This document shows, piece by piece, positions 14,364 to 64,000 of a DNA stretch of 64,000 nucleotides. Origin of the DNA: Heterodontus francisci. Taxonomy: Eukaryota. Positions within the stretch are counted from its first letter, which is position 1. Every line of letters starts with the position of its first letter. A program made the position numbers and the translations under genes. Under the pieces are notes generated by a model. That model was not told where the DNA came from, searched no databases, and saw nothing but the letters and a program-made list of their open reading frames with translations. Where the stretch lies: assembly GCF_036365525.1 (NCBI RefSeq), contig NC_090396.1, forward strand, positions 40,784,689 through 40,848,688, in the 5' to 3' direction.

Positions 14364-14488
14364 GGCAGATTTCAGATTTCCAGCAGTATTTTGCTTTTAT
14401 TTTATTGATGTATTCTGACACAGCTAAGTATAAATGCAACCAATCATAGTACTAGGCACGATAACAATGCTCCGGGTTGTTTTCAAAT

Positions 14489-14500
14489 GAAACAGAAACT
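14489..14500 (+). promoter_or_regulatory. ISRE (GAAACAGAAACT), putative gene 1 promoter; GAS-like TTCCCTGAA at 14971-14979
   Basis: Matches GAAANNGAAACT; lies in a unique, CpG-richer patch ~6 kb upstream of the gene 1 ATG; near-identical motif precedes genes 2 and 4. Confidence 0.55.
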
Positions 14501-15721
14501 GAGTTAACTGTAATTGCAGCGGAATCGGTGAGAGCAGAGTCCGTACACTGAAACAGTGAAAGGAGCGATGCCAAAAGCTGTGAGCCTGAATTCCCCCCCA
14601 CACCCCGCACTGTTTTTATTGCGAGAGGAAAATAAGATCAGTCAGAATATAGATGTCTTGAAATGAGATTGACGCATCGGCAGAAATGCCTGCAGCTACA
14701 AGACACACGGACATCTACTGACAGTCTTTTATTACTCCTCAGGATATATCCCTCCGTATTTCGCTGCCGGCAAAGCTTCGGCAATGGCAAACTAGTATAA
14801 GGTGAAATGATTTCTAACATATGTTTGGTTGATTCACAGTCGATTTGGACCAGGCTGTATCAGCAAAGCAGTCTGAATCACCCATGGATGTGTTTCTATA
14901 GTTAATGTATTGTTTGGAAGTGACCCAGTGATTTGGATGTAAAGTTGTTGAAAGTGGCGCCATTGGCAGATTCCCTGAAATCGTTGTTTCAGGAACTTTT
15001 GTAACCAGGTTTGCGAGATTTCTCTTTAAGACTGCTCAGTGTCGCTTTTTCGTTCTTTCACTTTAGGGTCCTGGTTCATGGGTGCACCGCTTGCTTTTCA
15101 AACATTTGTGTCCAGGTATATTTCTGGATAAAAGGAAATCTTCATCGGATATCAGTAAGTGGGAGTCAGTGTCCCAACTTTCTTCACTCAGTGTTTACAT
15201 CTGATTATTTCAGATTCACCATTCTCCGTTTTACAATTTAAAGGTTCCCCGACATCATGGAGAATGCTCGGCACAGGTTTTAATCATTTGTTTACAGAAG
15301 TTCTGATAAAAGGTCACAGACCTGAAACGTTAACTCTGTTTCTCTCTCCACAGATGCTGCCTGACCTGCTGAGTATTTCTAGCACTGCCTGTTTTCGTGT
15401 GATATTTTGGCTTTTTGCAGACGGGTGAAGAAGCTGCTGACACTTTGGGTCTCACTGATGTTGGGGTTCACTTCTGGTTTTGAGGCAGTTGGAAAACAGA
15501 AGGATGGGGTCGCCTGTTATACACCCCGCCTGCTTTTCATTTCCATTTTGGGTAGGGGCATAATTGGTGGTCGACACACAACTAACAAACTGGGCAATTC
15601 CTGCCGCATCCTCCCACCCAGCCCCTCCCCCAACTACCTCTCCCCCACAGTCACAGCACACTCAGGTAAAGGGGAGAGTTGGAGGACTATTAGGACCAAT
15701 AGTTGTTTAAAACAATATTTT

Positions 15722-16061
15722 CGTTTAGAGATACAGCACTGAAACAGGCCCTTCGGCCCACCGAGTCTGTGCCGACCATCAACCACCCATTTATACTAAT
15801 CCTACACTAATTCCATATTCCTACCACATCCCCACCTGTCCCGATATTTCCCTACCACCTACCTATACTAGGGGCAATTTATAATGGCCAATTAACCTAG
15901 CGACCTGCAAGTCTTTTGGCATGTGGGAGGAAACCTGGAGCATCCAGAGGAAACCCATGCAGACACAGGGAGAACTTGCAAACTCCACACAGGCAGTACC
16001 CGGAATTGAACCCGGGTCGCTGGAGCTGTGAGGCTGCGGTGCTAACCACTGCGCCACTGTG
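15722..16061 (-). mobile_element. tRNA-derived V-SINE (HE1-like)
   Basis: Near-identical to 9151-9500. Confidence 0.85.
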
Positions 16062-16304
16062 CAGTTTTGATAGAAAACCATTCATCAGATCATGTTTTCT
16101 TTGACTGTAGCAGTCCTTAATAACTTAAACAAAGGAGCAGGAGGAGGCCATTCAGCTCCTTGGTCCTGTTCTGCCATTTTGTTAGATCAGGACAGATCTC
16201 TATCTTAACTCTCTCTACCATAACTCATCATGGCTCTGTGACCCTTAATACCCTTGCCTAACAAAAAATCTCTAAATTCAGTTTTGAAAATTTGAATTTG
16301 ACCT

Positions 16305-20486: not shown

Positions 20487-20556
20487 ATGGCTACTTATTT
20501 TCCAAAAATACTTTGTTTTATTGTGCTTTTCTTCTGCCTAACCGTTCTGGCAAATA
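20487..20556 (+). CDS. Gene 1 (B7/PD-L1-like IgSF) coding exon 1: signal peptide MATYFPKILCFIVLFFCLTVLAN
   Basis: Acceptor ttttaaacag ends 20461; ATG at 20487; hydrophobic signal-like peptide; phase-1 donor A|GTGAGT at 20557. Confidence 0.85.
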
Positions 20557-20652
20557 GTGAGTTTTGTATCATTTCTGTTATATACAAAATTTCTGTTATC
20601 TACTTCTTCACCATGAAGTGTAAGTGTTAACTGATAGTCATAATTATTTCAG

Positions 20653-20982
20653 ATACATTTACAAATGTGGAGTGTAATAGCCCAGACACAGGAATACAGA
20701 ACAACCGCACTGTTTTGTTTTGTGAGTACAAGACACAAAGTGCGAAGGTATGTAATAGTACCTGGTTTTACGCTCCACTGAATACCACTAACTGGATGCA
20801 AGTTCCATGTACATCTGATAAGAAAAGAAATGCTCAGAAAAGAAAAAGGTGTCTTACAGATTTAAAGACTGCATCATTGATAATTGAGAAAACGAAAATC
20901 TTGGATGCAGGGAAATACCAGATTTTCCTAAACTGTGGATCAGATGGCTATGATACAATGTATGTAGATCTTCTGGTTAAAG
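20653..20982 (+). CDS. Gene 1 IgV-like exon (..TFTNVECNSPDTG..LFCEY..STWFY..ASLIIEKTKILDAGKYQIFLNCG..VDLLVK)
   Basis: Acceptor tatttcag|, donor G|GTAGGT, phase 1-1; B-strand Cys, C-strand Trp, E-strand ASLxI and D-x-G-x-Y motif of V-set domains. Confidence 0.9.
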
Positions 20983-21697
20983 GTAGGTAAATAAAATCTA
21001 TTTTCTTTCAACAGAGCAATACAAGAGGTAGCAATATTTCAGATCAGAGATTGAAGATGAAAACTAATATAATCGCATCAGTAAAGGAGCTATTTATAAT
21101 AATGGTCTTTTCTGGACCATTACAGTCTGCAGTCTAAGGGCATCGGGACATATGATGAGGCCAAGTACTTGTGATGATTTATCATAGATAACAATACACT
21201 TCTGGAGTTGGCTGTGATGTGCTTAGGTACAATCATCCAGAGTTCCAATTCCTGATTTATCCTTTGTGGAAGTGTGCATGAGTAGGCATTGGATGAGGAT
21301 GAGATTGAGCTCGGTTGTAAGGCCCCTGTAGTTGAAGCTCCTGCCACCACTTATTTTCCTGATTCACAAATGAATAACAACCACCCCAGCTGAGGTACTA
21401 GACAGCTGTTGGCACACATATCACCATGTTCCAGCATTGGCAACTTTTTAGTAGAGAGGAGGAATTGGAATTGAAATAAGTCATCTAAAATCACATGGTA
21501 CTCTGCTCTTTCAGTTCATTTTGACAAGAAGTAAAGCTTCACTCTTGTATGATGCAGTCCGCATGGAGTCTGTATAAAAAATATTGGGAAAATAGTTTGT
21601 GATGCTACTATAAAGGTGGGTGTTGGTCCTATTTGATCCAGTTATACATCGCTTGACTTGGGGTCTGAAGGTTAAACTTGTAAAGTATACTTTTCAG

Positions 21698-21952
21698 CTC
21701 CATATACTGTGCCACAAGTAACCAAAAGGGTGCAAGGTATTGAAAGAGGTCTTTCTTGTACTACACTTGGATATCCATTGGCAAAACTCTACTGGCAGAT
21801 TGAAAATGGAACCAATCTGACTGCCAATTCTATCATAACACAAACAGAAGATTTGTTGTACAACATCACGACTTACACTTCAGTAATTGGAGAATGGTGT
21901 TCTGTAAACTATAAATGCTTTGTATGCATTGAAAATGAATGCATATATGAAA
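21698..21952 (+). CDS. Gene 1 IgC1-like exon (APYTVPQV..LSCTTLGYPLAKLYW..LLYNITT..YKCFV)
   Basis: Acceptor cttttcag|, donor A|GTAAGT; K-APY junction and C-x3-GYP-x-A-x-x-x-W motif typical of B7-family/PD-L1 C domains. Confidence 0.9.
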
Positions 21953-23552: not shown

Positions 23553-23702
23553 GATTGGAGTGTCCTAAAAGTGAAACAATCCATCAGTCACTGAAAAGAA
23601 ATACCAGAACTGTTGATGGTGTTTATTTATCTCTGGGCTTAGTAACTATTTTGGCACTTTTGGTACTTTTCTTTACAAGGTTTAATATGAATGCTGATAA
23701 AG
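23553..23702 (+). CDS. Gene 1 stalk + transmembrane exon (..VYLSLGLVTILALLVLFFTRF..)
   Basis: Acceptor catttcag|, donor G|GTAAAG; in frame with the C exon; ~19-aa hydrophobic helix. Confidence 0.85.
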
Positions 23703-23766
23703 GTAAAGGCAGAACTGTTGTTGCATAAGAGCTTTCCAAGATTCTGTTTTTCTTGTCCAATGTTAC

Positions 23767-24704: not shown

Positions 24705-24924
24705 TTACCTTAAGGTTTCCACCACATTACCCACCCCACCCAACCTTCCTCTTCCCCATCTCTGAGTTGTGTGAAATTGCACCACACTCTATACCTTGTC
24801 CAAGTGAGCACTCTTATATATGAGTTTAGACAGTAAGTATGGTCAAGCTATATGAAAATGCAGATAATTAGTGCTGTCTTCTCCCAGTGTCAACACAGAT
24901 TCACTTTTGCACAACACCAAAAAC

Positions 24925-25480: not shown

Positions 25481-25938
25481 AATCAGAAAATCAAATTTTG
25501 ATTTTAGTCCACTTTAGATGAAAGGCACTGAGTATAATTGTAATGTTGCTGCTCTAGTTGAGATCAGCTGATTTAATTTAACCCACTACATGGGGGCATC
25601 TGGTCATTATTCCTTTGCACTCGATGTTGCATTGGGTCATCAAAGGTGCTCCTTCAAATGGCCTACCTATCCAACTGAGCTTGGGGGACTACAGGGAACT
25701 AATTTTCAGTGTCCACATTTTATTTTCTAAAACACGGTTTTGTCATTAAGCTAAAAACTTCAATAACTTGGTAACTACCTATAAAACAGTGCTATTTGGA
25801 GCTATAACATTGTGGACTGTTCCACTTTCTTGTTCATGATTATTAGAATGATCAAATTATTCAACATGTGATGTTACAAATGCAAACTACTGATATAAAT
25901 GTTACTTGAAAATTAATGTTTTCATTTTTTCTCTAAAG

Positions 25939-25983
25939 CATTAAGGCGTACATGGTCCACATCAACAACAGCTAATGTAAAAG
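25939..25983 (+). CDS. Gene 1 short cytoplasmic exon (ALRRTWSTSTTANVK)
   Basis: Polypyrimidine tract plus ctctaaag|, donor AAG|GTATGC; 45 nt, phase 1-1; followed by an 85-bp intron, mirroring gene 2. Confidence 0.7.
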
Positions 25984-26068: not shown

Positions 26069-26082
26069 ATGACACAGCATGA
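26069..26082 (+). CDS. Gene 1 terminal coding exon (DDTA*)
   Basis: Acceptor ttttttccaacag|; spliced CDS totals 864 nt (287 aa + stop). Confidence 0.6.
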
Positions 26083-35252: not shown

Positions 35253-35511
35253 GGGTATTTCCCACGTAGTTGCTTTCAGTTTTCCCTGCTACGAATATCA
35301 CAGTTCAACTAGTCTGGATCCACCGTCCCAATAACTTCCTGGAACATTCTGCAAGGAGGGGCTTTTAGTATTCACTATCTATTAATTGCAAGTTTAACAG
35401 CAGTGCTGGTAGGGAAAGCTCGCTCACAGCTCAGGCACATTTGTTCCCTTTTTCGATCGAAACTCTTCTTGGCCAGCTCGCCTGCTGTCCATTCATAACG
35501 AAACAGAAAGT
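35253..35511 (+). promoter_or_regulatory. Gene 2 interferon-responsive promoter: kB-like GGGTATTTCCC (35253), IRF-E GCTTTCAGTTTTC (35272), GAS TTCCTGGAA (35336), ISRE GAAACAGAAAGT (35500)
   Basis: Direct motif matches, clustered and partly conserved in the paralogous promoters at 48040-48280 and 59940-59990. Confidence 0.7.
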
Positions 35512-35519
35512 TTCAAGGC

Positions 35520-35890
35520 AAGGGAAGGAGAAAAAAAAGTGAGAGGCAGCTGTTTGCTGCGCTCATTTTAAACGGCACAGGTATGCAGAAAAGTTGTGAA
35601 GGAGCTATAGATAACCTTTTTTCTCGCTGTTTGCACCAACACACGCTGACAGAGGCTGGTAACTTTTCTAGGCTGGACAGTGGATCGAGCCGACAGCCCC
35701 ACTCGCTCTCCGCAGATCCCACCACTTGGTTCCGGGTTCAACTGTGTCGGTTGTTGTGTTTCGAGATCTCCTGAATCAGTCGCAGCAATTGTCAAGCTCT
35801 CGGATTTTGGATGGTGACTTTTCCAGGGTCAGTTTGAACCCCTGCCTCGTGTGGACCCGGTTGGATATCCGCATTTTCATTGGAACAAAG
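35520..35890 (+). other. Putative non-coding first exon of gene 2 (paralogs ~48330-48640 and ~59990-60324)
   Basis: Block conserved among duplicates directly after the ISRE, ending at AAG|GTACAG (35891; AAG|GTACAA at 60325 in gene 4). TSS not determinable. Confidence 0.45.
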
Positions 35891-36125
35891 GTACAGTCTG
35901 ACTTTCTGAAACTTAGGAACATTGCTTCCTTGACAATTCTGTAAAGCAAAGGTTTCTAGCAATGCAAATGTATCTGATAGTTCAACGATACACGGTTCTT
36001 TGAAATTCCTGACAAAACTTAAGTTATGATAGGCAAGAAAAGTGAAATCAGTTTTGATTGGATCCCTGAGGTTTAATGATTTTTCTCTGTTGTCCTTAAA
36101 TTCGCAGGGGAACTGAATTCTGGAA

Positions 36126-36192
36126 ATGGCTTCTCGCCATATAATAAGTCTCCTTTATTTATTCTTACTCAGATGCGCACCCTTTGCCCAAA
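36126..36192 (+). CDS. Gene 2 (B7/PD-L1-like IgSF) signal peptide exon MASRHIISLLYLFLLRCAPFAQ
   Basis: Acceptor ttcgcag| at 36107; gaaATGg Kozak context; donor A|GTAAGT; homologous exons at 51850 and 62034. Confidence 0.88.
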
Positions 36193-36271: not shown

Positions 36272-36589
36272 AGTTCGTGACTTTAGACTGTGAACATTCA
36301 GTGACAGGAATATTTAATGAAGACACCATACTACCATGCAAAATTAAGTCAACAGTGGTGAGCAAACCTAGTTTCATTCAACTGATTAAAGATGGAGACG
36401 AAACAGCTATCTTTACCTTTGAGGAAAGTGGCAAAGGAGTTCAGAGTCGAATTAAATTACTTCATCCAACTTCTCAAGATGTATCACTGGAAATCCAGAA
36501 AACACAAGTGTCAGATAAGGGGACATATCAATATTATTTGGAAACATATTCTGGTTACGACCGTCAGTACATCACACTGAAGGTTAAAG
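36272..36589 (+). CDS. Gene 2 IgV-like exon (KFVTLDCEHSVTGIFNEDTILPC..RIKLL..DVSLEIQKTQVSDKGTYQYYLE..ITLKVK)
   Basis: Acceptor ttttttag|, donor G|GTAAAT; V-set motifs LPC, R-I, DVSLxI, DxGxY, G-strand ITLKV. Confidence 0.92.
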
Positions 36590-39684: not shown

Positions 39685-39975
39685 CTCCATATAGTTTGCC
39701 AAATGTGACCTCATTTGCCAAAAGAAGAATGAGAATAACAGAACTCATTTGTGAAACAACTGGATACCCACTAGCTCAGATTCACTGGTATGTCGATGAA
39801 AAAAGGAACCACACATCCAAGTATAAAACTACTATTGAAGAAACCCCAGAAGGGCTGTTCAAGATCATCAGCACGCTTCAAATCAAAGTTGCAGAAAGTG
39901 CCTTGGAAGGCAATTATACTTGTGCCGTGTGGAATGTGGAAGAGCACACATATGAGGTGCAGAAACAGTTTCTAA
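39685..39975 (+). CDS. Gene 2 IgC1-like exon (APYSLPNV..LICETTGYPLAQIHWY..GLFKIISTLQI..YTCAVWN)
   Basis: Acceptor tttttttag|, donor A|GTAAGT; canonical B- and F-strand Cys and Trp; GYP and LFxxxSTLxI motifs as in PD-L1/B7 C domains. Confidence 0.93.
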
Positions 39976-40242: not shown

Positions 40243-40398
40243 ATTTTTCAGTTCCAGTCTTGGATCAATCTAATACTGATCGTCAAAGCGATGGGAAAAA
40301 GAGTAAGGTTCTCACAGCTGTCTTTGTCATTGTTGGAGCACTTGTATTTGGAATAGTCATCTTGATGGTTTGTCGATTCAGGAGAAATCTCTATTCAG
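40243..40398 (+). CDS. Gene 2 stalk + transmembrane exon (..KKSKVLTAVFVIVGALVFGIVILMVCRFRRNLYS)
   Basis: Acceptor tttcttccag|, donor CAG|GTATGA; hydrophobic helix followed by basic stop-transfer RFRR. Confidence 0.88.
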
Positions 40399-41880
40399 GT
40401 ATGATAGTTGTGTAAGTGCTTCTGATTTCTTTTGAAACTTCTCATCTTTGATACATCAATTATGATGTTGTCTTATTTTTAAAATACTTTTGTCTTTGTA
40501 TGCAGCCCATAATCTGACAACCTGATAATTCAGTTTAAATGTATAATATGTCACTAGTGCAAGTTTAAAGGCTTACTAAAAAGAAAGGTGCAACAGAATC
40601 TGAAACACTCTCAATGGCTTCAAATTCTGTCTGTCGTTCTAATTCACTTCCCAGCATTGTATGACTTAGGTAAGTTTTTAGCTGAACCACTGGATGTCAA
40701 GAATGCTGACCTCATTGAGTACAAAATTGTTCACTGAATATTCACTTAAGTGAAATAGAGAGAAGTCCAAAGCTTGGAATTTTACCTAATTGGTTACAAT
40801 GTTCAGATTTCCTTATGTCCTATTTGGTTGAAATAGTTGGGTGAAGAGGGGGCTGATAATGTAGCAATATAAGTCATGCTTCCCACCTTCCACCCCCGGC
40901 ACCCGCACCATCCTACTTCCACCTAGAGAATAAAGGAAACCCCCTGTTGAGTCACACTGACCTGCTCTTGTGCACTTTCTATTGAGCCATATCCAGCCAT
41001 CGAACAGCATGAGACAAGATGTGGAAATAAATCAACTGTGGGTTTCCAAGCCACAAGTTCAAAATTGTAATGTTTAGTACAGGGAAAAGCAAATGGGGAG
41101 GGGAAGGAAGGACAGATTCTTTAAATAGGAACTGGACCTTAAAAAAAATCATACCATATTCTTGGGCCCAACTTGCAAAGCCAACATTTATTGCCTCTAC
41201 CAAGTTGCCCTGAGAAGGTGCTAAAGGGCCACCTTCTTTGTAATTTGATATAACTGAATAGCTTGTTAAGCTAATTCAGAGGTCAATTAAGAATCAACTA
41301 CATTGGTGTGGGACTTGAGTTATATATAGAACAGGCAGGACTTTAGGCTTCCTTCCAAAAGGAAATTAGTGAACCAGTGGGTTTTTATGACAATGGTCCA
41401 AAATTAGCTGAAGCTTCATCGTCACCAAAAATGATACCAGCCTTTTTAAAAAAAAACTAGATTCAAATTCTCACACTGTGATGGTGGGATTTGAGCTTGT
41501 GTCCTCGATATGACTAGATCAGCTTTTGAATTCAGGAACATAGCCACTACATTATTGTACCTTTCTAGTCAAATAAGATGACTGAAATCTTATATGTAGG
41601 ATCGCACTAATGTTGAGGCATTTTGCTTATAAAATCATTCATATGGTTGGACAAAGGAGTAGGAAAGATTATTTGAATGTTAATTAGGGAAAATATGAGC
41701 ATTGATTTAACTGTCAATATTATTACAATTTTGCAGATTATGCTCTTTCTTATATTTAGGAGTTTTGAAACGATAAGAAATAATAAATTGCAAATTGTCA
41801 TAGGTGGAAATGTTATTTCAAATTAAATTTTAAGTACCAGCAATATTTAATTGTTTTTCCTTTTGCTTTTATTTTAGCAG

Positions 41881-41906
41881 GTAGAAGAGATTCCGAATTC
41901 CCAATG
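41881..41906 (+). CDS. Gene 2 short cytoplasmic exon (GRRDSEFPM)
   Basis: Long polypyrimidine tract with tandem TAGCAG acceptor; donor ATG|GTAGGT. Confidence 0.7.
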
Positions 41907-41985: not shown

Positions 41986-42015
41986 ATATCAAATGACCAG
42001 CAGTCTGATGCTTAA
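41986..42015 (+). CDS. Gene 2 terminal coding exon (ISNDQQSDA*)
   Basis: Acceptor T-tract + aacag|; spliced CDS 888 nt = 295 aa. An alternative donor at 41911 would give ..VDIK* instead. Confidence 0.65.
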   Translation: MSNDQQSDA

Positions 42016-48013: not shown

Positions 48014-48040
48014 TTCGGTCTTAAATGATGTTTACAAAGA

Positions 48041-48282
48041 CCGGGTATTTGTTACGTAGTTGTTTTCAGTTTCCTGTACTTTGAACCAGTTCAAATAGTC
48101 GCGATCCACTTTCCGATAACTTACTGGAACATTCTCCAAGGACGTTTCGGATTAGCTGTCCACTTTCTACAAGATTAATGTCAAAGCTAGTGGGGCGATA
48201 GCTCAGACACATTTAATTTGGGTTTCATTTCCGATCGAAACTCTTCTTTGCCAATTCGCCATTCATATCAAAACGGAAGGTG
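48041..48282 (+). promoter_or_regulatory. Gene 3 promoter paralog: ISRE GTTTTCAGTTTCC (48062), GAS-like TTACTGGAA (48121), degenerate proximal ISRE
   Basis: Colinear homology with 35251-35511. Confidence 0.55.
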
Positions 48283-49789
48283 TTCAAAGGGTAAGAAGGA
48301 ACTAGAAGCTGGAGGGCTAGTTTGATTGTTGCATTCACTTTCACCAGCACAGATGTGCAGAGAGACAGTAGAGGAGCTAACCTTGGATCACTATACTAAC
48401 ACAAGCTGACAGACTGGACAGTGGCTCGAGCCCCACTCGCTCCCCGCAGATCCTAGCGCTTGATTCTGGGATCAGTTGTGCAGTTGCTCTGTGTTGAGAT
48501 CCCCGAATCATTCACAGCAATTATCAAGGTCTCGGCTTTTGAATGGTTACTTTTCTTAGGTCAATTTGATGCCCTGTTTCGTGTTGGGCTGATTATACCT
48601 TTGTCGCAAAATATGGAGATCCAATCTGACTTCCAGAAAATTTGAGAAATGTTTCCTTGACACTTGTGTCGAATGTATCTCTCTTCGTGTAGTTTGTATA
48701 ATTGAGGAAATTGGGTAAGGGGGTGGGGGAAGTATTAGTAACAAATAAATGCAGTAAACTATTTTTAAAAAATTCCATGCAATCAGCTGCAATATTCCCA
48801 GAACTGGAAAGGAAGAGAAAAACAGCCAGGGATCTCACTGCTTGTTTCTATCCAATGCTAAAAAGGAAAAGAAAAACATCGCTTAAGTGTAGCTTATTGG
48901 TTGCATTAGAGAGCAGTAGCCCTCCATCATCAGCAGTTTGCATTAACCGTACTATAGATGTCCCCCAATTTTAAACCTTAAATTTTAAGTGTAAGAAAAT
49001 GTACGTCAGAATGAAACTGCTTTTCAATTTTGATGACAGACGAGAGCAGACTTAACTGTTTCATTCTGCAACAGAAAATGTCATTGGTAGTCAATGCCTG
49101 GTAAGTCACATGCATGTATGCATGGAGTAATGTGAGTGGGAGACTAATGACTGGCAATAACAATCCCTGCTACCAATATTCCAGATCTCTAACCCGAGTT
49201 GCTTATCAATGCAGTGTTCTTTTGATGAAGCTGTGCGACCAAGAGCTAATAATCGTCAGTCTGATATTTCTTACCTTAAAGTGGTTTTGCCCTATTTGAG
49301 ACAGAAAGGTATCTAGAAATAAAAAAAAGTATAATTTTCATCACAATGAATTCTAAGACAAAGTCACTATGGCTGGAAAAAATATCACTGCATCATGTGT
49401 TCTTGGACAATGCTTTTGAAAACATGCACAAAAGTACTTAAAAGGCAGCAAAATCCCATTAAAAAAGTGATCCCAGTGATGGTATTGATGATTGTTGTGT
49501 GCCGTAGTTTACTGCAACAGGATTACGGCACCAGAGCATAAATCTGATTGACCCTTCCTATCACCTCCATCCCTCTTGATTTCCTGCCCTTCCTGCCCAA
49601 TCCCCTTCCTTCCCAACCCCTCCGCCACCCAGCAGGTCCTGAGGGTCGTTGTTGGGGAGGCAACTGACGCAACCTCGTCCTAGTGGAAGCAATGAGCTTT
49701 CGCCACATGCTTAATTGGCATCTGCTGCTTTCTGGCAATATGCTTACAAAATCTGAGGCCCAATCTTAGGTGATTGCCATACAATCTAG

Positions 49790-50145
49790 GCTGACACTCC
49801 AGTGCTGACTGAGGGAATGCTGCAATGTCAGAAGTGCCATGTCTCGAATGACCTGTTAAATGAAGGCTCGGCCTGTCCCCTCATATGGATGTAAAGGTTC
49901 CATGGCACTATTTTAAAGAAGAGCAGAGGACCTCTCCCTGGTATACTGGCCAACATTTATACCTCAAATAACCACTGAAATACAGATTATCTTGTCATTA
50001 TCACATTGCTGTTTGTGGGATCTTTGCTGCACACAAATTGGCTACCTATGTTACAACAGTGACTACAGTTCAAAATAATTTATTGGCAGTGAAGCATTGA
50101 GATGTCCAGAAGTTGTGAAAGACTGTATATAAATGTAAGCCTTTC
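49790..50145 (+). mobile_element. Deu-domain SINE (SacSINE/AmnSINE-like); further copies ~6185-6394+7622-7720, ~9720-9975, ~62725-63125
   Basis: Core GATGTAAAxGxTCCCATGGCACTATTT..GAAGAGCAG..CCTGG..TGGCCAAxATT with L2-like tail. Confidence 0.7.
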
Positions 50146-50263
50146 TTTTGTTCTCTCTCTCTCTCTCTCTTCCCGACTTCCTTACCAGAAGCTAAGGATG
50201 CTATCAATTTGACTAATTTTCTACGATTGCTTGTTGATTCATGATAACATTAATTAATTCTTA

Positions 50264-50398
50264 TATAAAAACAAAATACTGCAGATGCTGGAAATCTGAA
50301 ACAAAAACAAGAAATGCTGGAATCACTCAGCAGGTCTGGCAGCATCTGTGGAAAGAGAAGCAGAGTTAACGTTTCGGGTCAGTGACCCTTCTTCGGAA
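50264..50398 (-). mobile_element. Penelope-like element terminal fragment with 12-bp TSD (copies ~14260-14400, 15299-15390, 26675-27060, 29235-29310, 30505-30600, 54085-54400, 55160-55320, 59745-59885)
   Basis: Recurrent CAGATGCTGCCAGACCTGCTGAG..CCAGCA module joined to a hammerhead-like core; TSD AATTAATTCTTA at 50252 and 50397. Confidence 0.65.
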
Positions 50399-51849
50399 TT
50401 AATTCTTAGGCTGGATTGTGTCCTAAACAGAGATTGAATGGCACTAGTCATTCAATAGACTTGCCCTTGACCATACACTTTCCATGGGGTTGTGCGTAGC
50501 AAGTTCCTATCAGCTAACCATCCAAAAAGTGGAGTGTAAATAGGCAAGCAACTGTGCATCTCCTGAACCAATCAGATTGAGGAATCATTAATGAACTGCA
50601 CAGAGGTAGGTTTTAAGGAGTGTCTTAAAGGAGGAAAGCGAGGTAGAGGAGTGGAGAGGTGTAGGGAGGGTGTTCCAGAGCTTATGACCTAGACAGCTGA
50701 AGGCACAGCTACCAATGGTGGGGTGATTAAAATCGGCATGCTCAAGAGGCTGGAATTAGAAGAATGCAGATATCTCAGGGTTGCATGGCTGAAGAATATT
50801 ACAGAGATAGGGAGAGGCCAGACCATGAAGGGATTTGAAAACAAGGATGAGAATTTTAAAATTGTGGGATTGCTTAACTGGGAGCTGATGTAGGTCAGCG
50901 AGCACAGGGATGATGGGTGAACAGGAACAAAACTGAAATTTGCTGGTAAGGAGTTTTTTGAATTGCCTAGTGCATTAGACATTCAAAATTCCTATACTGA
51001 TTGGAGCATTAGAGATGATCTCAGTACAAGTTGTGGTTATTTTTTTGAAACAATAGGCAAAGAAAATTTTGTACGTGTGGACACATTCAAAGGTTGTTAA
51101 ATGCAGAGATAGACTCAGAAAGTATCAGGATATTTAAATCTGTCTTTTCTGATTTCTCAACGTGTTTTTCTTGTAAGCAGCTGAGGTGTATCGAGATCAG
51201 GAAGGTCTGGGGTTTAATCTCTGGGTGTGAAACACAAAAATTGCCCTGACTGTTCAGTTGTGATGCATCTTCCGAAGGAAGATCTCACTCCTTGAATTTA
51301 TGCCATTTCTCCAGGTTTCAAGATTTCCACTTATCTTCCACTGAAGTTATGGTGTAAGAGCAGGGGACCTCCATGGGAATAGTGTCTTTTATAACAGGGC
51401 TTATGCAATGAATACCATTTGGATGAAATATCAGAAACCTGTGGATTTGTATCCTCTTTCTCAAGGAATCAGCAACTACAGAAGAGGATTGTAGGAGAGA
51501 ACATTAGCAAGAAAAAATGTGCTATTAATAAATTAGTTTCGGCATTATTGAAGTTTCCATTTCTATACTGTTGTCAGTTCACAGATTCTGAGATTCAAGC
51601 TGGAGAATTTTAAGTAAATCCTACAAAATGCATTTGTTAGTTTTAACATTAAGTTGCAAAATAATTAGCATTCAAAATTTTCTAGAGATGGAAATGTATC
51701 TTCCATCAGTTATATATAGTTATTCCAATTTCCTGACAAAACCTAACTTATGATGCAAAAGAAATGTGAAATCAGGTTGATTAGATTCCTGAGATTTAAT
51801 GATTTTTTTTGTGTTGTCTTTAAATCAACAGGTCAATTGAATTCTGCAA

Positions 51850-52329
51850 ATGGGCTCATACCATATAATAAGTCTACTCTACGCTGTCTTATACACAAGT
51901 ACATCTTCTGCTGAAAGTAAGTACTGAAGTGCTTCCCAATTTACAGCTCATTCAACCCCAACGGGCAATGCAGTAATACAAGTTAATGAAATTATTGGTT
52001 TTCATGGTTCGTGACTTTAGATTGTGAGCGTTCAGTGACAGGAATATTTAATGAAGACACTAAACTACCATGTACATGCAATTCAACAAATCTGAAAATA
52101 TTTAATCACATTGAACAGAGCAAATATGGAAAAACTTAAACCATGCCTATCTTTAACTCAACGGAAAGTGTCAAAGGAACTCAGGGTTGAATTAAATTAC
52201 TTCATCAAGACTCACAAGATGTATCACTGGTAATCCAGAAAACACAACTGTCAGAAAATGGGACAAATAAATATTATTTGCAAACAATTTCTGGTCACGT
52301 CTGTCAAGACATCACACTGAAGATTAAAG
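51850..52329 (+). pseudogene. Gene 3: pseudogene paralog of genes 2/4 (signal exon 51850-51916, IgV exon ~52006-52329); C, TM and tail exons deleted
   Basis: Clear DNA homology to 36126-36589. V-exon acceptor AG mutated to AT (52004-52005). In-frame TAA (52137) and TGA (52188, CGA>TGA). Downstream sequence jumps from intron 3 to the 3'-UTR homolog at ~52640 (= ~42840). Confidence 0.9.
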
Positions 52330-53432
52330 GTAAGTCAAAGTATACGTTCCCTGCTATTCTTCCTTGTTGAATATTGGTTTCCTTTCATTGGCAACAAATT
52401 CCAGGTTTATTCTCACCCTGAAAAAGCTTGACATGTGAGATAGATAAACAGCAAGTTATAATGAATCAATGATCAGTTCACTACTTTTTGGTGGTGTTGG
52501 TTGGACAACAAATGTTAGCCCAGATACCCAGAGAACACCCTGCTCATCTTTAAATAGTACCACAGATCTTCTCTATCCACCTGACCAGGTAGGTGCAGGT
52601 CTCAACTTTATGTCTCATCTGAAAGCCAACAGTTGTACTTTGAAAATATACTTCCTGTTGGTTGATTACAGAAATATGGTGAAAAGGTTTGTGTGTTGGA
52701 CTGTATTTCTCACTCAGTGAAAAAGGAAGTGCAGTTGTAGGCAACCACACTGAAAAATTGTGCAAATTTATAATTATATTTACACATTAGTAATGACTGT
52801 AAATCACTTTAATGTAAATCAAATTGATCGATTTTGTCTTCCAACATGTTGCTTTACTACTTTGTTCTAAATCACAGTTGAAGCCATTTGAAACAAATAA
52901 ATTACTATTTTATTGTAAAATCTGATTTGCCTGAGGTGTTGGGTTTCATATTTTGTTGAATAACATATGTGAATACATTTTTAAAATCTAATGAATTTTT
53001 TTACTTTATTCTTGCTTTGTATAAATAGACAATGCACAAAGATGTTGTACCTTATGAAGGTTAATAAATAATGTATTTGTTTCAACTGCTTTATTCATTC
53101 TTGCTAAAATTCTGGACTATTTTTCGTGCAATAAATGCGTCTGTCGTCTTCCGTTAAATGCGGTGTAAAAATATCGAGATAAAGCTTATCACAAAGAGCT
53201 TTGCAAAATAACAGAGTCTCTGATTTAAGTTAAAGCTCCACTTAAGTCATGGAATCTGAGGCCAGTTTTAGTCTTAATATAAACAAACTCTGTTGGTCCC
53301 ATAACTGTCTCATAATGAGCTAGAATTCAGTTGTAGTCTACTGAAAGATTACGCTGTTCTCATGGTGTCCTTAAGCCCAAGGAGTGTCGTAAGCAATGAT
53401 CTTTAATTGTGAGATTGCTTAACACACTCCTT

Positions 53433-59748: not shown

Positions 59749-59785
59749 AGTTCTGATGAAGGTTCACTGACCTGAAACATTAACT
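59749..59785 (+). ncRNA. Minimal type I hammerhead ribozyme motif (Penelope-associated)
   Basis: agtt-CTGATGA-aggt.tcactg.acct-GAAA-c.at-TA-act: intact core boxes, stem II hairpin, stem I arms. Confidence 0.65.
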
Positions 59786-59972
59786 CTGCTTCTCTCTCCA
59801 AAGATGCTGCCAGACCTGCTGAATATTTCCAGCATTTCTTGTTTTATTTCAGATTTCCAGCATCCATAGTATTTTGCTTTTATATTAGGAAAGTTCAGTG
59901 ACGGCTCAAACTCATTTCTTTTTTTTTGGTTGAAACTTTTATTTGCCAACTTGCCTGCTGGCCATTCACATT

Positions 59973-59984
59973 GAAACAGAAAGT
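59973..59984 (+). promoter_or_regulatory. Gene 4 proximal ISRE GAAACAGAAAGT; intronic GAS TTCCCAGAA at 60456 (paralog 48795)
   Basis: Identical to the gene 2 ISRE at the homologous position. Confidence 0.6.
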
Positions 59985-62033
59985 TTAAAGGAAATCAAAG
60001 TGGGAGAGGCAGCTGTTTGTATTTTCACCAGCACAGATGTGTAGAGAGTTAGTGGAGGAGCTACAGATAACCTTCTCTAACTGTTTGTACTGACACAAGC
60101 TGATAGAGGCTGGTAACTTTCCCAGGTTGGATAGTGGAGCGAGCCAACAGTCCCACTCGCTCCCCACAGATCCCACCACTTGCTTCCGGGTTCAACTGTG
60201 CGGTTGTTTTGTGTCGAGATCTCCTGAATCAGTTGCAACAATTGTCAAGCTCTCGGATTTTGTTTGGTGACTTTTCCAGGGTCAATTTGACCCCCTGTTT
60301 CGTGTTGGGCAGATGGGGATAAAGGTACAATCTGATACTCGTGTAGAATGTGTGTGTATACTTGAGGAGATTAGGTAAAAGGATGGGGAAGTATTAGTTT
60401 AACAGAAATAAATGCAGAAAACGGCTTGAAAATAATAAGTTCAATAGCCTCAGTATTCCCAGAAAAGCATCCAAGGATCTCATTGCTGGTCTCGATCAAA
60501 TAACTGGCGCGGGAAAGTGGAATACTAAAAAAGCAATTTTTTTTAAAAATCCCTTAAATGCAGTTCTGTGACTCCATTAGAGAGCAGCAGTTACATCAAG
60601 ATCTGTATTACTGTTCACAGCAGGAACAGATTCATCCCCCAGTTACCGATTACGTTGGTGCAATGTGGTTCGTGCTCTCTTCACTGTAATAAATCTCTGG
60701 AACTGGCTTCGCCTTGCAGGGTGGGATCATTTCTTACAGACTTAGTCGGAATAATGGAGCCCTCCATCATTAGCACCGTGCATCACCCGGATTATAGATG
60801 TCCCAGTTGTAAAATTCTAAACTCAGGCAGCTGGTGGAACTACTTGGAAACATTCAAAGTTTGTTGTTGAAAACAGAGATAAACTAGAAAAGCATTAGGA
60901 TATTTAAACCTGACTTTTCCGATTGCTCATTGTGTTTATCCTGTAAATAGCGAAGCTGTAGAGAGACCAGGAAGGTCTGGGATTTCAACTCTGCTGTGGA
61001 GGCTGGAATTGCCCTGTCAGTTCACTTGTGATGCACTCTGTGGTGGAATAACTCGCCAACACTCACTCCTGGAATCAGGGTTTCGACTGATCTTCCACTG
61101 AAGTTAAGATGGAAGATCGGGGAAACTCCATGGAAATTCTTCCCCTTTATATCAGGACTTGCACAACAAGTGCTAGACATGTGGGTGAGGTATCAGAATC
61201 TAACGCATGCCAATAACTAAAGAAGAGGTGGACAGGTGAATTAATGGAAGTGGGACAAGGGAGCAGGCAGTCAACTCTCTTCCTGGGGTGGGTTATCTAT
61301 TTAACTATCTAACCCCTTCCCAAAAACCCGGGCATGATTCCATCCCCACATCCCCAACTGACACCCCAGGATCAGGGATCAGGTCTCCCCCCAAGATCTG
61401 GGAAAGGGAGCCCCCTTGGTGCTAGTAGCAGCTGCAGCCTTGTCTGGAATGTGCCCCTCCCGAACAGAAGCCAAGCCTACCAAACATGTTGAATTTCAGG
61501 CAGGGAGCCTTGCTAATAAAAAGACGCACGCTGTGGATTCAAAACTACACAGCATGTGGGGAAATCCGAAAGCCTTGTCCACCACTGTCTGCAGAACCTG
61601 CTGCTGTCAAGATCAGAGCCACAGACTTATTGCAGTGTCTTATGTGTATACTGTTTTCAGTTTTGGCTTTCTTGCTTTGAGAATTGTAAGAAAACACTGC
61701 AAAATGCACTTGTAAGGTTTACAGAAACACATAAAATAATTGTGATCATTCAAACATTTCTAGCAAATATATCTGATGGAACTTTTAATTCAGTGAAATA
61801 CAGTTCTTTGACATTCCTGACAAAACCTAACTTATGATGCAAAAGAAAGTGAAATTGTCGGGGCCATGATCAGATCAACCATGATCTTATTGAAGCTGGA
61901 ACAGGTTCGAGGGGCCGAATGGCATACTCCTGCACCTATTACTTATGTTCTTAAATCAGGTTTGATTTGATCTCTTAGATTTAATGATTTTTCTGTATTG
62001 TCCCCCAATAAGCAGGTGAACTGAATTCTGGAA

Positions 62034-62100
62034 ATGAGTTCATACCATACAATAAGTCTCCTTTATGTCATCTTCTATGCAAGCACACTCAATGCACTAA
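62034..62100 (+). CDS. Gene 4 signal peptide exon MSSYHTISLLYVIFYASTLNAL
   Basis: Acceptor aagcag| at 62015; donor A|GTAAGT; paralogous to the gene 2 exon. Confidence 0.82.
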
Positions 62101-62190
62101 GTAAGTACTGAAATGCATCTCGATATAAAGCTCATTCAACAGCAATTGTCATTGAAGTAACATGAGCTAATGAAAATTATTGTTTTTCAG

Positions 62191-62514
62191 AGCTTGTGAA
62201 TTTTGATTGTGAGGATTTAGTGACAGGAATATTTAACGAAGATCCGAAACTACCATGTCCATTCAGTTCAAGCAATATGAATACATTTGAGCTCATTGAA
62301 CAGAGTAAATGTGAAAAGGATGGAGAAACATTAATCTTTAATGCAACTGAAAGGGACCAAGAAGCTCAGGGTCGAATTAAATTACTTCATCCACATTCAC
62401 AAGATATATCATTGGTAATCCAGAAAACACAACTGTCAGATGTTGGGGAATATAAATATTACCTGGAAACAACTTCTGGTCACATCAGTCAATACATCAC
62501 ACTGAAGGTTAAAG
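62191..62514 (+). CDS. Gene 4 IgV-like exon (KLVNFDCEDLVTG..LPC..DVGEYKYYLE..ITLKVK); remaining exons, if any, lie beyond the window
   Basis: Acceptor tttttcag|; open frame; weak donor G|GTGGAT; strong similarity to gene 2 V exon. Confidence 0.82.
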
Positions 62515-64000
62515 GTGGATAAAATTATAATTTCCCTGCTTGTTCATCCATGTAGAATATTGGTTGCCTCTAATTTAAAATTTTAAGTTCAATAGTTGCA
62601 GCAGTCCCAGAATTAGAAAGGAAGAAAAGGAACCAGGGATCTTACCACTGGTCCCTATCAAATAATCATACTGGAAGGTGGAATGCTAAAAAAGAAAATA
62701 AAAAAATCCCTTATGTGTAGTCTAATGTGTCAGCTGTTGTTCAGTTGCTAGCACTCTTGTCTCTAAGTTACAAGGTTCTAGGATCAAGTCCCACTCCACA
62801 GCTTGAGCACAAAAATCAAGGCTGACAGGAGCTGTTTTCTGGACAAAATTTGAAACTGAGGCCCCATCTGCCAGTTTAGGTGGATGTAAAAGATCCCATG
62901 GCAATATTTTAAAGAGCAGCAGTGGAGATATCCCTGGTGTCTGGAACCAATATATCTTCCTCAATCAACATCACAAAAATAGATTATTTGGTCATTATGA
63001 CATTGCTGTTTGCGGGAGTTGTGTTTCCTATAATGATAACTAAACTTTAAAATACTTCATTGGCTGTAAAATGCTTTGAAATGTCCGGTGGTCCTGTAAG
63101 GTGCTACATAAATGCAAAGTTTTTTTCTATTAATTAGCAGCAAATTCCAGTTTTATTCTCATCCTTAAAGAGCTTGACATGTGAGACAGGTAAACAACAA
63201 GTTATAACGAAGGCCACATTTAGAGAGAAAAGAAAGAATGATTGTGCATTTATATAGCCCCTTTCACATTCTCAGAGCCTTCCAAAACATATTACATAGA
63301 ATGCTTTGAGTTGCAGCCACTGTTGTTGTGTAATCAATCTCAACAACCAACTTGCATGGAGAGAAGTTCCACGAATGACAAAGCGAATGATCAGTTCATC
63401 TGTTCTTGGTGGAGTTGGCTGCACAAAAGATGTTGTCCAGGACACCAAGAGAACACTTTATTTTAATTCTTCCATGGGATGTGGGCATCACTGGCAGGGC
63501 CAGCATTTGTCGCCCATCTCTAGTTGCCCTTGACAATTGAGTGACATGCTAGGCCATTGCAGACAGCAGCTAAGAGTCAACCACATTTCTGTGGGTATGG
63601 AGTCACATGTAGGTCAAACCTGGTTAAAACAGCAGATTTCCTTCCCTAAAATACCTTAGGGAACCAAATGGGCTTCTATGGCAATTAATGATACCTTCAT
63701 AGTACCATGATTGAGACTAGTTTTCAATTCTAGATTTTTACTAATTATTTGACTTTAAACTCCATCAACTGCTCTTATGGGATTTGAAACTATGCTCCTA
63801 GCTTATTCATGTGCATCAATAGTTTAGTGATATTACCACTACACCACCATCATCTTTGAATAATATATTGGGATCTTTTCTATCCACCTTAGCAGCATGT
63901 GTAGGCTCAATTTAAAGTCTCATCTCAAAGACAACATTTTCAACAGTGCCTGCTGTGACAACTGAGTGACTTGCTGGGCCATTGCAGACAGCAGCTAAGA

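What the first reader, a model, noticed from the sequence alone, without database searches (positions are those of the whole stretch)
14480..64000. Tandem array of four interferon-inducible B7/PD-L1-like genes in a shark-like genome
Seen: four same-strand genes with signal / IgV / IgC1 / TM / two short tail exons and mostly phase-1 introns. Two are complete (287 and 295 aa), one is a pseudogene and one is truncated by the window edge. Established: this exon layout (non-coding exon 1, signal, V, C, TM, two tail exons), the K-APY V/C junction and the CxxxGYPxAxxxW motif are features of CD274/PDCD1LG2 and related B7 ligands. Inference: a lineage-expanded, birth-and-death B7-like ligand family with unusual V domains, possibly an undescribed immune-regulatory system of cartilaginous fishes. 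Orthology to PD-L1 is not demonstrated.
Basis: partly seen in the sequence, partly recalled or inferred. Interest (0 to 1): 0.8.

Follow-up and report, generated by a model that had tools for sequence, protein, structure and literature searches.

The report
Horn shark B7-like gene cluster
This stretch of horn shark DNA carries a row of real, transcribed genes for small surface proteins related to the immune "checkpoint" ligands PD-L1 and B7-H3; they belong to an old, unstudied fish branch of that family whose outer domain is held together in an unusual way.

Summary
The window is Heterodontus francisci. It carries four same-strand signal/IgV/IgC/TM genes.

- Gene A (20487-26082) equals a RefSeq protein of 287 aa.
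- Gene C is a pseudogene.
- Gene D is cut by the window edge and equals a TM-less 230-aa "CD276-like" model.

Spliced contigs from two studies reproduce all five coding junctions of gene B.

The proteins are B7/butyrophilin-type. Solved B7-H3, BTN1A1, PD-L1 and PD-L2 are nearly tied by profile score and by fold. PD-L1 orthology is therefore not shown.

The family is not shark-only. Relatives occur in rays, sturgeons, teleosts (zgc:174863) and one caecilian.

Its hallmark is an A-strand cysteine (94 of 96 sequences). All 42 shark and ray sequences lack the canonical F-strand Cys and C-strand Trp.

An ISRE sits upstream of A, B and D. Interferon induction itself is untested.

I could build no tree against named B7s and could not test synteny.

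The scan's first readers also noted this array here and in the adjoining window.

The parts
14489..14500 (+). ISRE-like 12-mer upstream of gene A (putative promoter or exon 1 region; exon 1 itself not located)
   Evidence: Exact match to GAAANNGAAAST. The window has 4 matches against 0.59 expected, and 0 of 100 shuffles reach 4. Context shown.
20487..20556 (+). Gene A signal-peptide exon (CDS part), phase-1 donor
   Evidence: Equals P0099 residues 1-23. Splice context.
20653..20982 (+). Gene A IgV exon
   Evidence: Equals P0099 residues 25-133. Pfam V-set is below its cut-off. The AF2 model of P0099 gives a beta sandwich, with block means of about 64-90 pLDDT over the V domain.
21698..21952 (+). 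Gene A IgC exon
   Evidence: Equals P0099 residues 134-218. Skipped in RefSeq isoform P0105.
23553..23702 (+). Gene A transmembrane exon
   Evidence: Equals P0099 residues 220-268. Helix 246-274 in the model.
25939..25983 (+). Gene A cytoplasmic exon 1
   Evidence: Equals P0099 residues 269-283, with AG and GT at its borders.
26069..26082 (+). Gene A last coding exon (4 codons and stop)
   Evidence: The only match in 25983-34000 to the back-translated last four residues of P0099 behind an AG and a pyrimidine tract.
35500..35511 (+). ISRE-like 12-mer upstream of gene B, inside a block conserved with genes C and D
   Evidence: Identical 12-mer in gene D; three changes in pseudogene C.
35413..35891 (+). 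Gene B promoter and putative non-coding exon 1 block (borders inferred)
   Evidence: 79% identical to 59888-60305 (gene D) and 68% to the matching block of gene C. Donor-like AAAG|GTACAG conserved in B and D. Contigs carry about 192 letters upstream of the signal exon.
36108..36192 (+). Gene B signal exon (CDS from 36126)
   Evidence: P0076 residues 1-22. Junction 36192>36272 in X1, X2, X3 and X5. Acceptor read.
36272..36589 (+). Gene B IgV exon
   Evidence: P0076 residues 24-128. Pfam V-set 37.1 bits. Junction to 39685 in all four runs.
39685..39975 (+). Gene B IgC exon
   Evidence: P0076 residues 129-225. Pfam Ig_3 38.9 bits. Junction 39975>40243 in X1-X3.
40243..40398 (+). Gene B transmembrane exon
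   Evidence: P0076 residues 227-277. Helix 245-278 in the AF2 model. Junction to 41878 in X1-X3.
41878..41906 (+). Gene B cytoplasmic exon 1 (GRRDSEFPM motif)
   Evidence: P0076 residues 278-287. Junction 41906>41986 in all four runs.
41986..42015 (+). Gene B last coding exon with stop
   Evidence: P0076 residues 288-296 and TAA.
48034..52465 (+). Gene C pseudogene: promoter-like block, open signal exon (51850-51916), and a V exon (about 52006-52358) with two in-frame stops and a lost acceptor. The C, TM and tail exons are deleted.
59973..59984 (+). ISRE-like 12-mer upstream of gene D
62034..62100 (+). Gene D signal exon (CDS)
   Evidence: P0005 residues 1-22. Context.
62191..62514 (+). Gene D IgV exon; the rest of the gene lies beyond the window
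   Evidence: P0005 residues 24-130. Pfam V-set 30.4 bits.

Best explanation
The window holds part of a tandem array of transcribed horn shark genes. They encode type I membrane proteins with one IgV domain, one IgC domain, a TM helix and a short tail, of the B7/butyrophilin superfamily.

They belong to an old lineage found in sharks, rays, ray-finned fishes (the uncharacterised zgc:174863 group) and at least one caecilian. This lineage sits beside PD-L1/PD-L2, B7-H3 and the butyrophilins, not inside any of them.

Shown: the gene models, the splicing and transcription of gene B, the fold class, the family's range, the two old subfamilies (A-type and B-type), the pseudogene, and the cysteine pattern.

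Inferred:
- The proteins act as cell-surface co-signalling ligands. The membrane-distal V domain would bind an IgSF receptor on lymphocytes, as other B7 ligands do.
- In sharks and rays the V domain is stapled by a disulfide between the invariant A-strand Cys and the B-strand Cys. This would replace the usual B-F bond.
- Transcription is raised by interferon/IRF signalling through the upstream ISRE.
- The conserved basic-Ser tail motif is a regulatory site.
For: Gene models: identical to RefSeq proteins of Heterodontus francisci.

RNA: all five coding junctions of gene B appear in spliced contigs. One 1518-letter contig covers V, C and TM with 0 other letters.

Fold: the AF2 model has mean pLDDT 82.7. 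Foldseek puts PD-L1 first at 4e-14, with BTN3A and B7-H3 within about tenfold. In VIA-align all 50 entries shown are B7 or BTN ectodomains, at Z 14.7-16.7.

Profile against the PDB, per V-C unit in bits:
- whole family: CD276 93 and 89, BTN1A1 83, PD-L1 79-80, PD-L2 68, CD80 61
- ray-finned profile: CD276 77 and 73, BTN1A1 59, PD-L1 52-55
- A-type profile: BTN1A1 62, CD276 55 and 49, PD-L1 47-50, PD-L2 48.5

Range:
- The V exon of gene B finds 60 representatives at E<=0.001 among 1.84 billion.
- hhalign of shark and ray sequences against ray-finned ones gives E 9.5e-41 over 281 columns.
- The same profile against the caecilian P0162 gives E 8.9e-21, with a shared GRRxSEF tail.
- P0162 itself scores only 26 bits with human PD-L1 and 36 with 4Ig CD276.
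- The 31-row tree splits bony from cartilaginous vertebrates at 98/95.
- None of the 51 named rows carries a PD-L name.

Literature: zebrafish zgc:174863 was listed as microglia/macrophage-enriched and without a predicted human or mouse orthologue (PMC7720500, Table 1 and section 9 read).

Cysteines: the A-strand Cys is present in 94 of 96 sequences, the F-strand Cys in 5 of 96 and the C-strand Trp in 7 of 96. All 42 chondrichthyan sequences lack the last two. In the model, strand 25-29 and strand 45-49 have equal length and end or start on the two cysteines.

ISRE: 4 matches against 0.59 expected. Three lie on the + strand upstream of A, B and D.
Against: - I could not fetch any named reference B7 sequence. 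There is therefore no tree against CD274, PDCD1LG2, CD276, VTCN1 and the rest. 'Beside, not inside' rests on nearly tied scores, on one caecilian sequence on a long branch (2.37), and on an argument from what a paper does not say.
- Foldseek ranks PD-L1 first, and RefSeq calls gene B 'PD-L1-like'.
- Kondo et al. 2025 (PMC12151841) report a single PD-L1 in cartilaginous and ray-finned fishes. Their sequences are in closed supplements, so their shark PD-L1 could be one of these genes.
- Synteny was not testable.
- The disulfide is not measured, because the structure tool gives no coordinates. Basal teleosts carry all three cysteines.
- Interferon induction, surface expression and any receptor are untested.
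- The runs are only guessed to be RNA by their record. Their spliced contigs are my reason to call them RNA.
Confidence: 0.55

Rival explanations
1. These genes are the cartilaginous-fish (co-)orthologues of PD-L1/PD-L2, multiplied in tandem. They serve as ligands of shark PD-1. The ray-finned zgc:174863 group would then be what recent papers call fish PD-L1.
For: - Foldseek's first hits are human PD-L1.
- RefSeq names 4 of the 40 rows PD-L1-like and 7 PD-L2(-like).
- An ISRE is present, and PD-L1's interferon induction is established knowledge (recalled).
- F24 at the mature N-terminus is at least 90% conserved, and a G-x-D in the FG region is present in part of the family. Kondo 2025 names F19 and D122 as conserved PD-1 contacts (section 12 read).
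- A review states that zebrafish macrophages express PD-L1 (PMC12298638, passage). zgc:174863 is microglia/macrophage-enriched.
- PD-1 exists in sharks (abstract of PMC12151841).
Against: - CD276 scores above PD-L1 in all three profile searches. BTN1A1 does so as well, but in the A-type search only by its E-value order.
- The V exon alone finds no PD-L1 chain at E<=10 in the PDB, only one PD-L2 chain at E 0.17.
- The caecilian member is far from human PD-L1 (26 bits), although amphibians have both PD-L1 and PD-L2 according to Kondo 2025.
- That paper calls PD-L1 'better conserved than PD-1' and notes no loss of the canonical Cys and Trp. Such a loss would be odd to leave unsaid, since it discusses exactly such losses for PD-1.
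- It found a second PD-L gene 'only in tetrapods', while the catshark has at least three genes of this family.
- The D at G+2 is present in only about 6 of 14 sequences by my reading of the alignment.
Confidence: 0.28
2. They are fast-evolving duplicates of B7-H3 (CD276).
For: - CD276 is the best solved match for the whole-family and ray-finned profiles.
- It shares the APYS junction and the GYPxAxxxW motif (alignment).
- 8 of the 40 rows are named CD276(-like or homolog).
- A 2026 survey groups PD-L1, PD-L2, CD276 and ICOSL in one cluster. It finds CD276 in all gnathostomes and describes it as the most conserved member (PMC13262535, passages).
Against: - Identity to human CD276 in the structural alignments is about 20%. 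That does not fit the strongly conserved orthologue the survey describes.
- The canonical V-domain Cys and Trp are absent.
- The A-type profile ranks BTN1A1 above 2Ig CD276.
- A slowly evolving protein attracts the best score from any relative, so rank alone says little.
- That teleosts have a separate cd276 gene is my recollection and was not tested.
Confidence: 0.1
3. They are adhesion-type IgSF proteins (CD2/SLAM, CD200 or nectin-like), not co-signalling B7 ligands.
For: - The V domain lacks the canonical disulfide, as CD2/SLAM V domains do (recalled).
- The Atlas feature search lists OX-2 (CD200)-like and nectin clusters among the near neighbours.
- The zebrafish paper guessed 'cell adhesion'.
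Against: - No CD2, SLAM, CD48, CD58 or CD200 chain is among the 60 rows shown, among the 59 rows, or among the rows shown by Foldseek or VIA-align.
- Nectins appear only low in the lists.
- The B-strand Cys is kept, unlike CD2.
Confidence: 0.05

Closest known systems
PD-L1 / PD-L2 (CD274, PDCD1LG2)
   Same: - Signal, IgV, IgC, TM and short-tail architecture, with one domain per exon and phase-1 introns.
- Top Foldseek match, at TM-score 0.74-0.82 by target length.
- VIA Z 16.3 for PD-L1 and 16.0 for PD-L2.
- An ISRE-like element upstream.
   Different: - The profile score is lower than for CD276 and BTN1A1.
- The V exon alone has no significant PD-L1 match.
- There is no canonical B-F disulfide or C-strand Trp in any of the 42 shark and ray sequences, but there is an extra invariant A-strand Cys.
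- The family has its own conserved tail motif.
- The genes lie in tandem arrays with two old subfamilies.
- Orthology, synteny and PD-1 binding are untested.
B7-H3 (CD276)
   Same: - Best solved sequence match for two of the three profiles.
- Same APYS V/C junction and GYPxAxxxW motif in the printed alignment.
- VIA Z 16.2.
   Different: - About 20% identity.
- V-domain cysteines rewired.
- No 4Ig form seen in sharks.
- Short, different tail.
Butyrophilins (BTN1A1, BTN2A1, BTN3A)
   Same: - The ectodomain fold is tied with the best B7 matches (Z 16.7 for BTN1A1).
- BTN1A1 is second or first among V-C matches.
- RefSeq names the ray A-type genes BTN1A1-like.
   Different: There is no B30.2/SPRY domain. 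The tail is about 18 residues, and the precomputed Pfam lists for P0076 and its relatives hold Ig families only.
Zebrafish zgc:174863 and its ray-finned relatives (uncharacterised)
   Same: - Same family by profile-profile comparison, covering ectodomain, TM and tail (E 9.5e-41).
- Same A-strand Cys (51 of 53).
- A similar tail motif in 11 of 53.
   Different: - Some basal ray-finned members keep the canonical Trp (7 of 53) and F-strand Cys (5 of 53).
- No A-type/B-type split was seen there.
- The only paper I found lists it as a microglia/macrophage-enriched gene of unknown function (PMC7720500).

Membership tests
B7 superfamily (PD-L/B7-H3/ICOSL cluster and allies) | Type I protein: signal peptide, membrane-distal IgV, membrane-proximal IgC, one TM helix, short tail | tested here: met
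   Pfam on single exons. AF2 models show two beta sandwiches and a TM helix. Exon maps.
B7 superfamily (PD-L/B7-H3/ICOSL cluster and allies) | One domain per exon, phase-1 introns between signal, V, C and TM exons | tested here: met
   Junctions of gene B confirmed by spliced contigs.
B7 superfamily (PD-L/B7-H3/ICOSL cluster and allies) | Closest solved relatives by sequence and fold are B7/BTN ectodomains | tested here: met
   Multi-Ig proteins such as DSCAM and titin score through repeated domains only.
B7 superfamily (PD-L/B7-H3/ICOSL cluster and allies) | Canonical IgV core: B-strand Cys, C-strand Trp, F-strand Cys | tested here: not met
   F-strand Cys in 5 of 96 sequences and Trp in 7 of 96. 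Both absent in 42 of 42 shark and ray sequences. The B-strand Cys is kept in 95 of 96. This is a departure in one feature; the fold is still predicted with high confidence.
B7 superfamily (PD-L/B7-H3/ICOSL cluster and allies) | Binds a CD28-family or other IgSF receptor and modulates lymphocytes | not testable with these tools
   Needs binding and cell assays.
PD-L1 (CD274) orthologue | Groups with CD274/PDCD1LG2 in a tree, or is their reciprocal best match | tested here: inconclusive
   No reference B7 sequences could be fetched, so there is no tree. Profile scores put CD276 and BTN1A1 above PD-L1. Foldseek puts PD-L1 first by a small margin. VIA-align scores are tied.
The scan's notes do not mention these genes.
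PD-L1 (CD274) orthologue | PD-1 contact residues F19 and D122 conserved (Kondo 2025, section 12) | tested here: inconclusive
   F24 of P0076 is at least 90% conserved. A D two residues after the invariant G117 is present in about 6 of 14 sequences (my reading). The equivalence of positions rests on my recollection of the human protein.
Butyrophilin | Cytoplasmic B30.2 (PRY/SPRY) domain | tested here: not met
   P0076 has 296 aa and P0099 has 287 aa, each with a tail of under 20 residues. No SPRY in the precomputed Pfam lists.
CD2/SLAM family | V domain without either canonical Cys, C2 domain with two disulfides, best matches among CD2/CD48/CD58/SLAM | tested here: not met
   The B-strand Cys is kept. 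No such chain is among the rows shown.

The most novel reading that the evidence does not exclude
This is a further, unnamed branch of the PD-L/B7-H3 group. It arose before sharks and bony vertebrates split, survives in fishes and caecilians, and was lost in amniotes.

Its V domain would have moved its core disulfide from B-F to A-B. Basal teleosts, which carry all three cysteines, would be the intermediate state.

It would be interferon-driven. It would serve as the ligand of one of the orphan CD28-family receptors described in 2024 (CD28HL1, CD28HL2, CD28X). These receptors have a similar range: sharks, ray-finned fishes and some tetrapods, but not humans (PMC11599192, abstract and section 16 read).
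Probability: 0.15. Interest if true: 0.8.

Novelty: new member of a known kind. Interest (0 to 1): 0.45.

Why it matters
Checkpoint ligands of the B7 family are central to vertebrate immune regulation, and their early history is poorly resolved.

This cluster shows that sharks express several genes of a B7 lineage that databases label inconsistently (ten kinds of name). I found no paper that describes it as a family.

If it is distinct from PD-L1 and B7-H3, it adds a branch to the B7 tree. That branch would be a natural candidate partner for CD28-family receptors that have no known ligand.

If instead it is the fish PD-L1, then shark PD-L1 is multi-copy and lacks the canonical V-domain disulfide. 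That would matter for anyone modelling the ancestral PD-1/PD-L1 interface.

Either way, the conserved swap of a core disulfide in an Ig domain is a tidy case for protein evolution.

Tried and rejected
1. A tree against named B7 proteins. No tool gave me reference sequences.
- The word-indexed searches returned only family members: 16, 40 and 59 rows.
- The representative search returned family members and unrelated multi-Ig proteins.
- The Atlas returns no ids.
- I used profile and fold rankings against the PDB instead. These cannot prove orthology.

3. Literature. All ten searches are used.
- One search found Kondo 2025.
- ('zgc 174863') found 0 papers.
- Searches gave nothing that describes this family.
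- One search found PMC7720500.
- Flajnik 2012 and Hu 2023 are not held.
- Within these searches I found no description of the family or of its cysteine pattern. Subscription journals and closed supplements may hold one. In particular, Supplementary Files 1B and 2A of PMC12151841 list which shark gene was called PD-L1.

4. The GAS element as part of a promoter cassette. There are 19 matches against 23.1 expected, and none is shared by B and D at matching places. Rejected.

5. The sigma-70/terminator scan was a wasted call. It is a bacterial consensus and says nothing here.

6. The A-B disulfide could not be measured. Structure prediction returns no coordinates.

7. CD2/SLAM, CD200 and nectin readings are rejected on the match lists.

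8. Contig depths are not used as expression levels.

Full report
**What is there.** The window has no N. Stop-free stretches on the + strand showed three V-like exons (near 20.65, 36.27 and 62.19 kb), a broken one near 52.2 kb, and two C-like exons (21.7 and 39.7 kb). Each of the two complete sets is followed by a hydrophobic exon. Pfam on the single stretches gave V-set above its cut-off for genes B and D (37.1 and 30.4 bits). For gene A it gave 13.8 bits, below the cut-off. The C exon of B matched Ig_3, ig, I-set and C2-set_2 above their cut-offs, C2-set_3 just below its own (26.4 bits against 27) and, at the cut-off only, C1-set. A self-comparison showed that B, C and D are paralogous at the DNA level, from a block upstream of exon 1 through the V exon. 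The stretch that holds C, TM and tail exons in B (36.7-43.0 kb) is reduced to about 290 bp in C.

**Species and gene models.** A search of 1.84 billion representatives with the V exon of gene B found 60 proteins at E<=0.001.
- One of them, P0005, is XP_067914191.1, 'CD276 antigen-like [Heterodontus francisci]'. It equals gene D's signal and V exons letter for letter.
- P0076 ('programmed cell death 1 ligand 1-like', 296 aa) equals gene B in six exons.
- P0099 ('uncharacterized protein', 287 aa) equals gene A in six exons.
- The exon lengths sum to 891 and 864 nt, which fits both proteins.
- All coding introns are phase 1, except the last intron of gene B.
- Gene C has an open signal exon, a V exon with two in-frame stops and no AG acceptor, and no C, TM or tail exon.
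- P0005 has no TM segment and has Tyr in place of the first IgC cysteine.
Wherever a full-length sequence was needed I used these stored database proteins by id.

**Transcription.** One run search gave seven runs from two studies. I laid X1-X3 (one sample) and X5 (another study, another coded organism) on 36050-42049.
- Contigs of X1, X2 and X3 skip exactly 36193-36271, 36590-39684, 39976-40242, 40399-41877 and 41907-41985, all with GT..AG ends.
- One 1518-letter contig of X3 covers V, C and TM with no other letter.
- X5 shows three of the five junctions.
- The records only guess 'RNA'. The spliced contigs are what shows it. Contigs cannot give level, strand or ends.
- The contigs hold 277 letters before the V exon, and the signal exon explains 85 of them. 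An upstream non-coding exon therefore exists, but I did not map it.

**Family and fold.** The C exon of gene B alone matches CD276, PD-L2 and PD-L1 among single V-C proteins. The V exon alone has only weak matches, to BTN1A1, VTCN1 and VSIG4. Family profiles against the PDB gave the scores below, in bits.

| Profile (call) | CD276 (2Ig) | BTN1A1 | PD-L1 | PD-L2 | CD80 |
|---|---|---|---|---|---|
| 14 members (38) | 93 / 89 | 83 | 79-80 | 68 | 61 |
| Ray-finned only (65) | 77 / 73 | 59 | 52-55 | not among the 60 rows shown | not among the 60 rows shown |
| A-type (66) | 55 / 49 | 62 | 47-50 | 48.5 | 36 |

- An AF2 model of P0076 with 45 aligned sequences has mean pLDDT 82.7.
- Foldseek ranks PD-L1 first (4e-14), with BTN3A and B7-H3 within about tenfold.
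- In VIA-align all 50 entries shown are B7 or BTN ectodomains, tied at Z 14.7-16.7.
- The model of P0099 is weaker (72.8) but has the same plan.
- The superfamily is therefore clear. The nearest named member is not.

**Range and history.**
- Word-indexed searches found 40 relatives of the shark profile. 39 are from sharks and rays and one from a carp. They carry ten kinds of automatic name: CD276 8, PD-L2 7, PD-L1 4, BTN1A1 3, hemicentin 2, OBCAM 1, NCAM1 1, L1 1, hypothetical 1, uncharacterised 12.
- A ray-finned profile found 59 relatives: 50 named ray-finned rows, 8 unnamed Logan rows and one caecilian. None of these is named PD-L.
- Profile-profile comparison links shark and ray sequences to ray-finned ones (E 9.5e-41 over 281 columns). 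It links them to the caecilian at E 8.9e-21, including a GRRxSEF tail.
- In a 46-row tree rooted on ray-finned sequences, an A-type clade (7 sharks, 5 rays; 100/99) and a B-type clade (19 sharks, 11 rays; 95/88) each predate the shark-ray split. Gene B sits in an 11-row shark clade (97/93). Gene D pairs with a second horn shark gene, P0082 (100/99).
- In a 31-row tree P0082 joins great white and catshark genes (97/94). Bony and cartilaginous vertebrates separate at 98/95, with the caecilian on a long branch.
- From these trees I left out V-only forms (P0001, P0013) and most of the ray-finned hits.

**The V domain.** I aligned 96 sequences. Seven of the 60 ray-finned ids, those outside 240-420 aa, were dropped first.
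- The A-strand Cys is present in 94 and the B-strand Cys in 95.
- The F-strand Cys is present in 5 and the C-strand Trp in 7, all of them ray-finned.
- All 42 shark and ray sequences lack both.
- Tarpon, bonytongue and arapaima proteins carry all three cysteines.
- In the model the two cysteines close strand 25-29 and open strand 45-49. That fits cross-strand neighbours, but a bond is my inference.

**Regulation.** GAAANNGAAAST occurs four times against 0.59 expected. It lies on the + strand at 14489, 35500 and 59973, upstream of A, B and D. It is identical in B and D and decayed in pseudogene C. GAS motifs are at chance level. Nothing here tests induction.

**Is it PD-L1?** Kondo et al. 2025 report one PD-L1 in fishes including sharks, with F19 and D122 conserved and 'better conserved than PD-1'. 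I read the abstract, sections 5, 12 and 23, and passages. The sequences are in closed supplements.
- Against identity: that paper is silent on a lost disulfide, the catshark has several genes of this family, the caecilian member is far from human PD-L1, and zgc:174863 is listed as having no predicted human orthologue.
- For identity: Foldseek's ranking, the RefSeq names, and expression of the zebrafish relative in microglia and macrophages.
- I put a separate lineage at about 0.55 and PD-L orthology at about 0.28.

**Limits.** There are no reference B7 sequences, no synteny, no coordinates and no raw reads. Genes A and D have no RNA laid on them.

Noticed in passing
window 36126-40398 (gene B exons), run X5: Contigs of the second study (another coded organism) differ from the window by about 5% in the V exon (17 letters in 318) and the C exon (12 letters in about 290). 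They also have a 6-letter insert behind 39715. Among the listed differences, 8 of 8 changed V codons, 7 of 8 C codons and 2 of 2 signal codons alter the residue, against 1 of 5 TM codons. Only part of the differences was listed, and the contig could come from an allele, a sister species or a close paralogue.
   Followed up: partly
window 36126-36649 against 62034-62575: Between paralogues B and D the V exon (74% identity) and the signal CDS (67%) are more diverged than the intron between them (84%), the 60 bases after the V exon (87%) and the promoter/exon 1 block (83%). V-exon dN/dS is 0.77. This fits diversifying selection, or relaxed constraint on the TM-less copy D.
   Followed up: partly
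window 41878-41906; stored protein P0162 residues about 268-282: The ten-codon cytoplasmic exon of gene B encodes GRRDSEFPM. The caecilian protein has GRRLSEF at the matching place. R[RK]xSxx[PQ][MWI] occurs in 8 of 19 shark B-type tails and 11 of 53 ray-finned tails, and in 0 of 11 ray B-type, 0 of 12 A-type and 0 of 1 caecilian tails. It may be a basophilic-kinase site; untested.
   Followed up: partly
window 36850-38050 (intron of gene B), also 2700-5480, 33137-34273, 57700-58600: These are reverse-transcriptase (RVT_1) fragments of one LINE family, 84-88% alike. The copy in gene B's intron draws summed contig depths of 10^4 to 10^5 in all four runs, so the repeat family is abundant in those libraries.
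   Followed up: partly
window 9140-9498, 15716-16062, 42394-42750; inverted 10014-10315: A repeat of about 340 bases, with copies 91-94% identical. It looks like a SINE. It was not searched for tRNA-like heads.
   Followed up: no
window 14258-14376, 15299-15395, 26709-26818, 50295-50398, 54285-54402, 55162-55340, 59749-59853: A repeat of about 100 bases in both orientations, 80-97% alike. Copies lie 110-230 bases before the ISRE of gene A and 35 bases before the conserved promoter block of gene D.
   Followed up: no
gene A, window 21698-21952: RefSeq holds a second isoform of gene A (P0105, 202 aa) that skips the IgC exon and so joins V directly to the TM exon. I laid no reads on gene A.
   Followed up: no
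window 51552-51563, - strand: The fourth ISRE match lies on the opposite strand, about 290 bases before the signal exon of pseudogene C.
   Followed up: no
stored proteins P0001, P0013, P0084-P0086: Relatives with other layouts exist. There are V-V-TM and V-TM forms of unlooked-up origin (P0001, P0013). There are also ray proteins of 373-392 aa, named hemicentin-, OBCAM- or NCAM1-like, that score as the best family matches.
   Followed up: no
gene A type, stored proteins of alignment A4: Shark A-type proteins carry four further cysteines in the V domain. A-type IgC domains of both sharks and rays carry several extra cysteines after the F strand. Both features are conserved across species.
   Followed up: no
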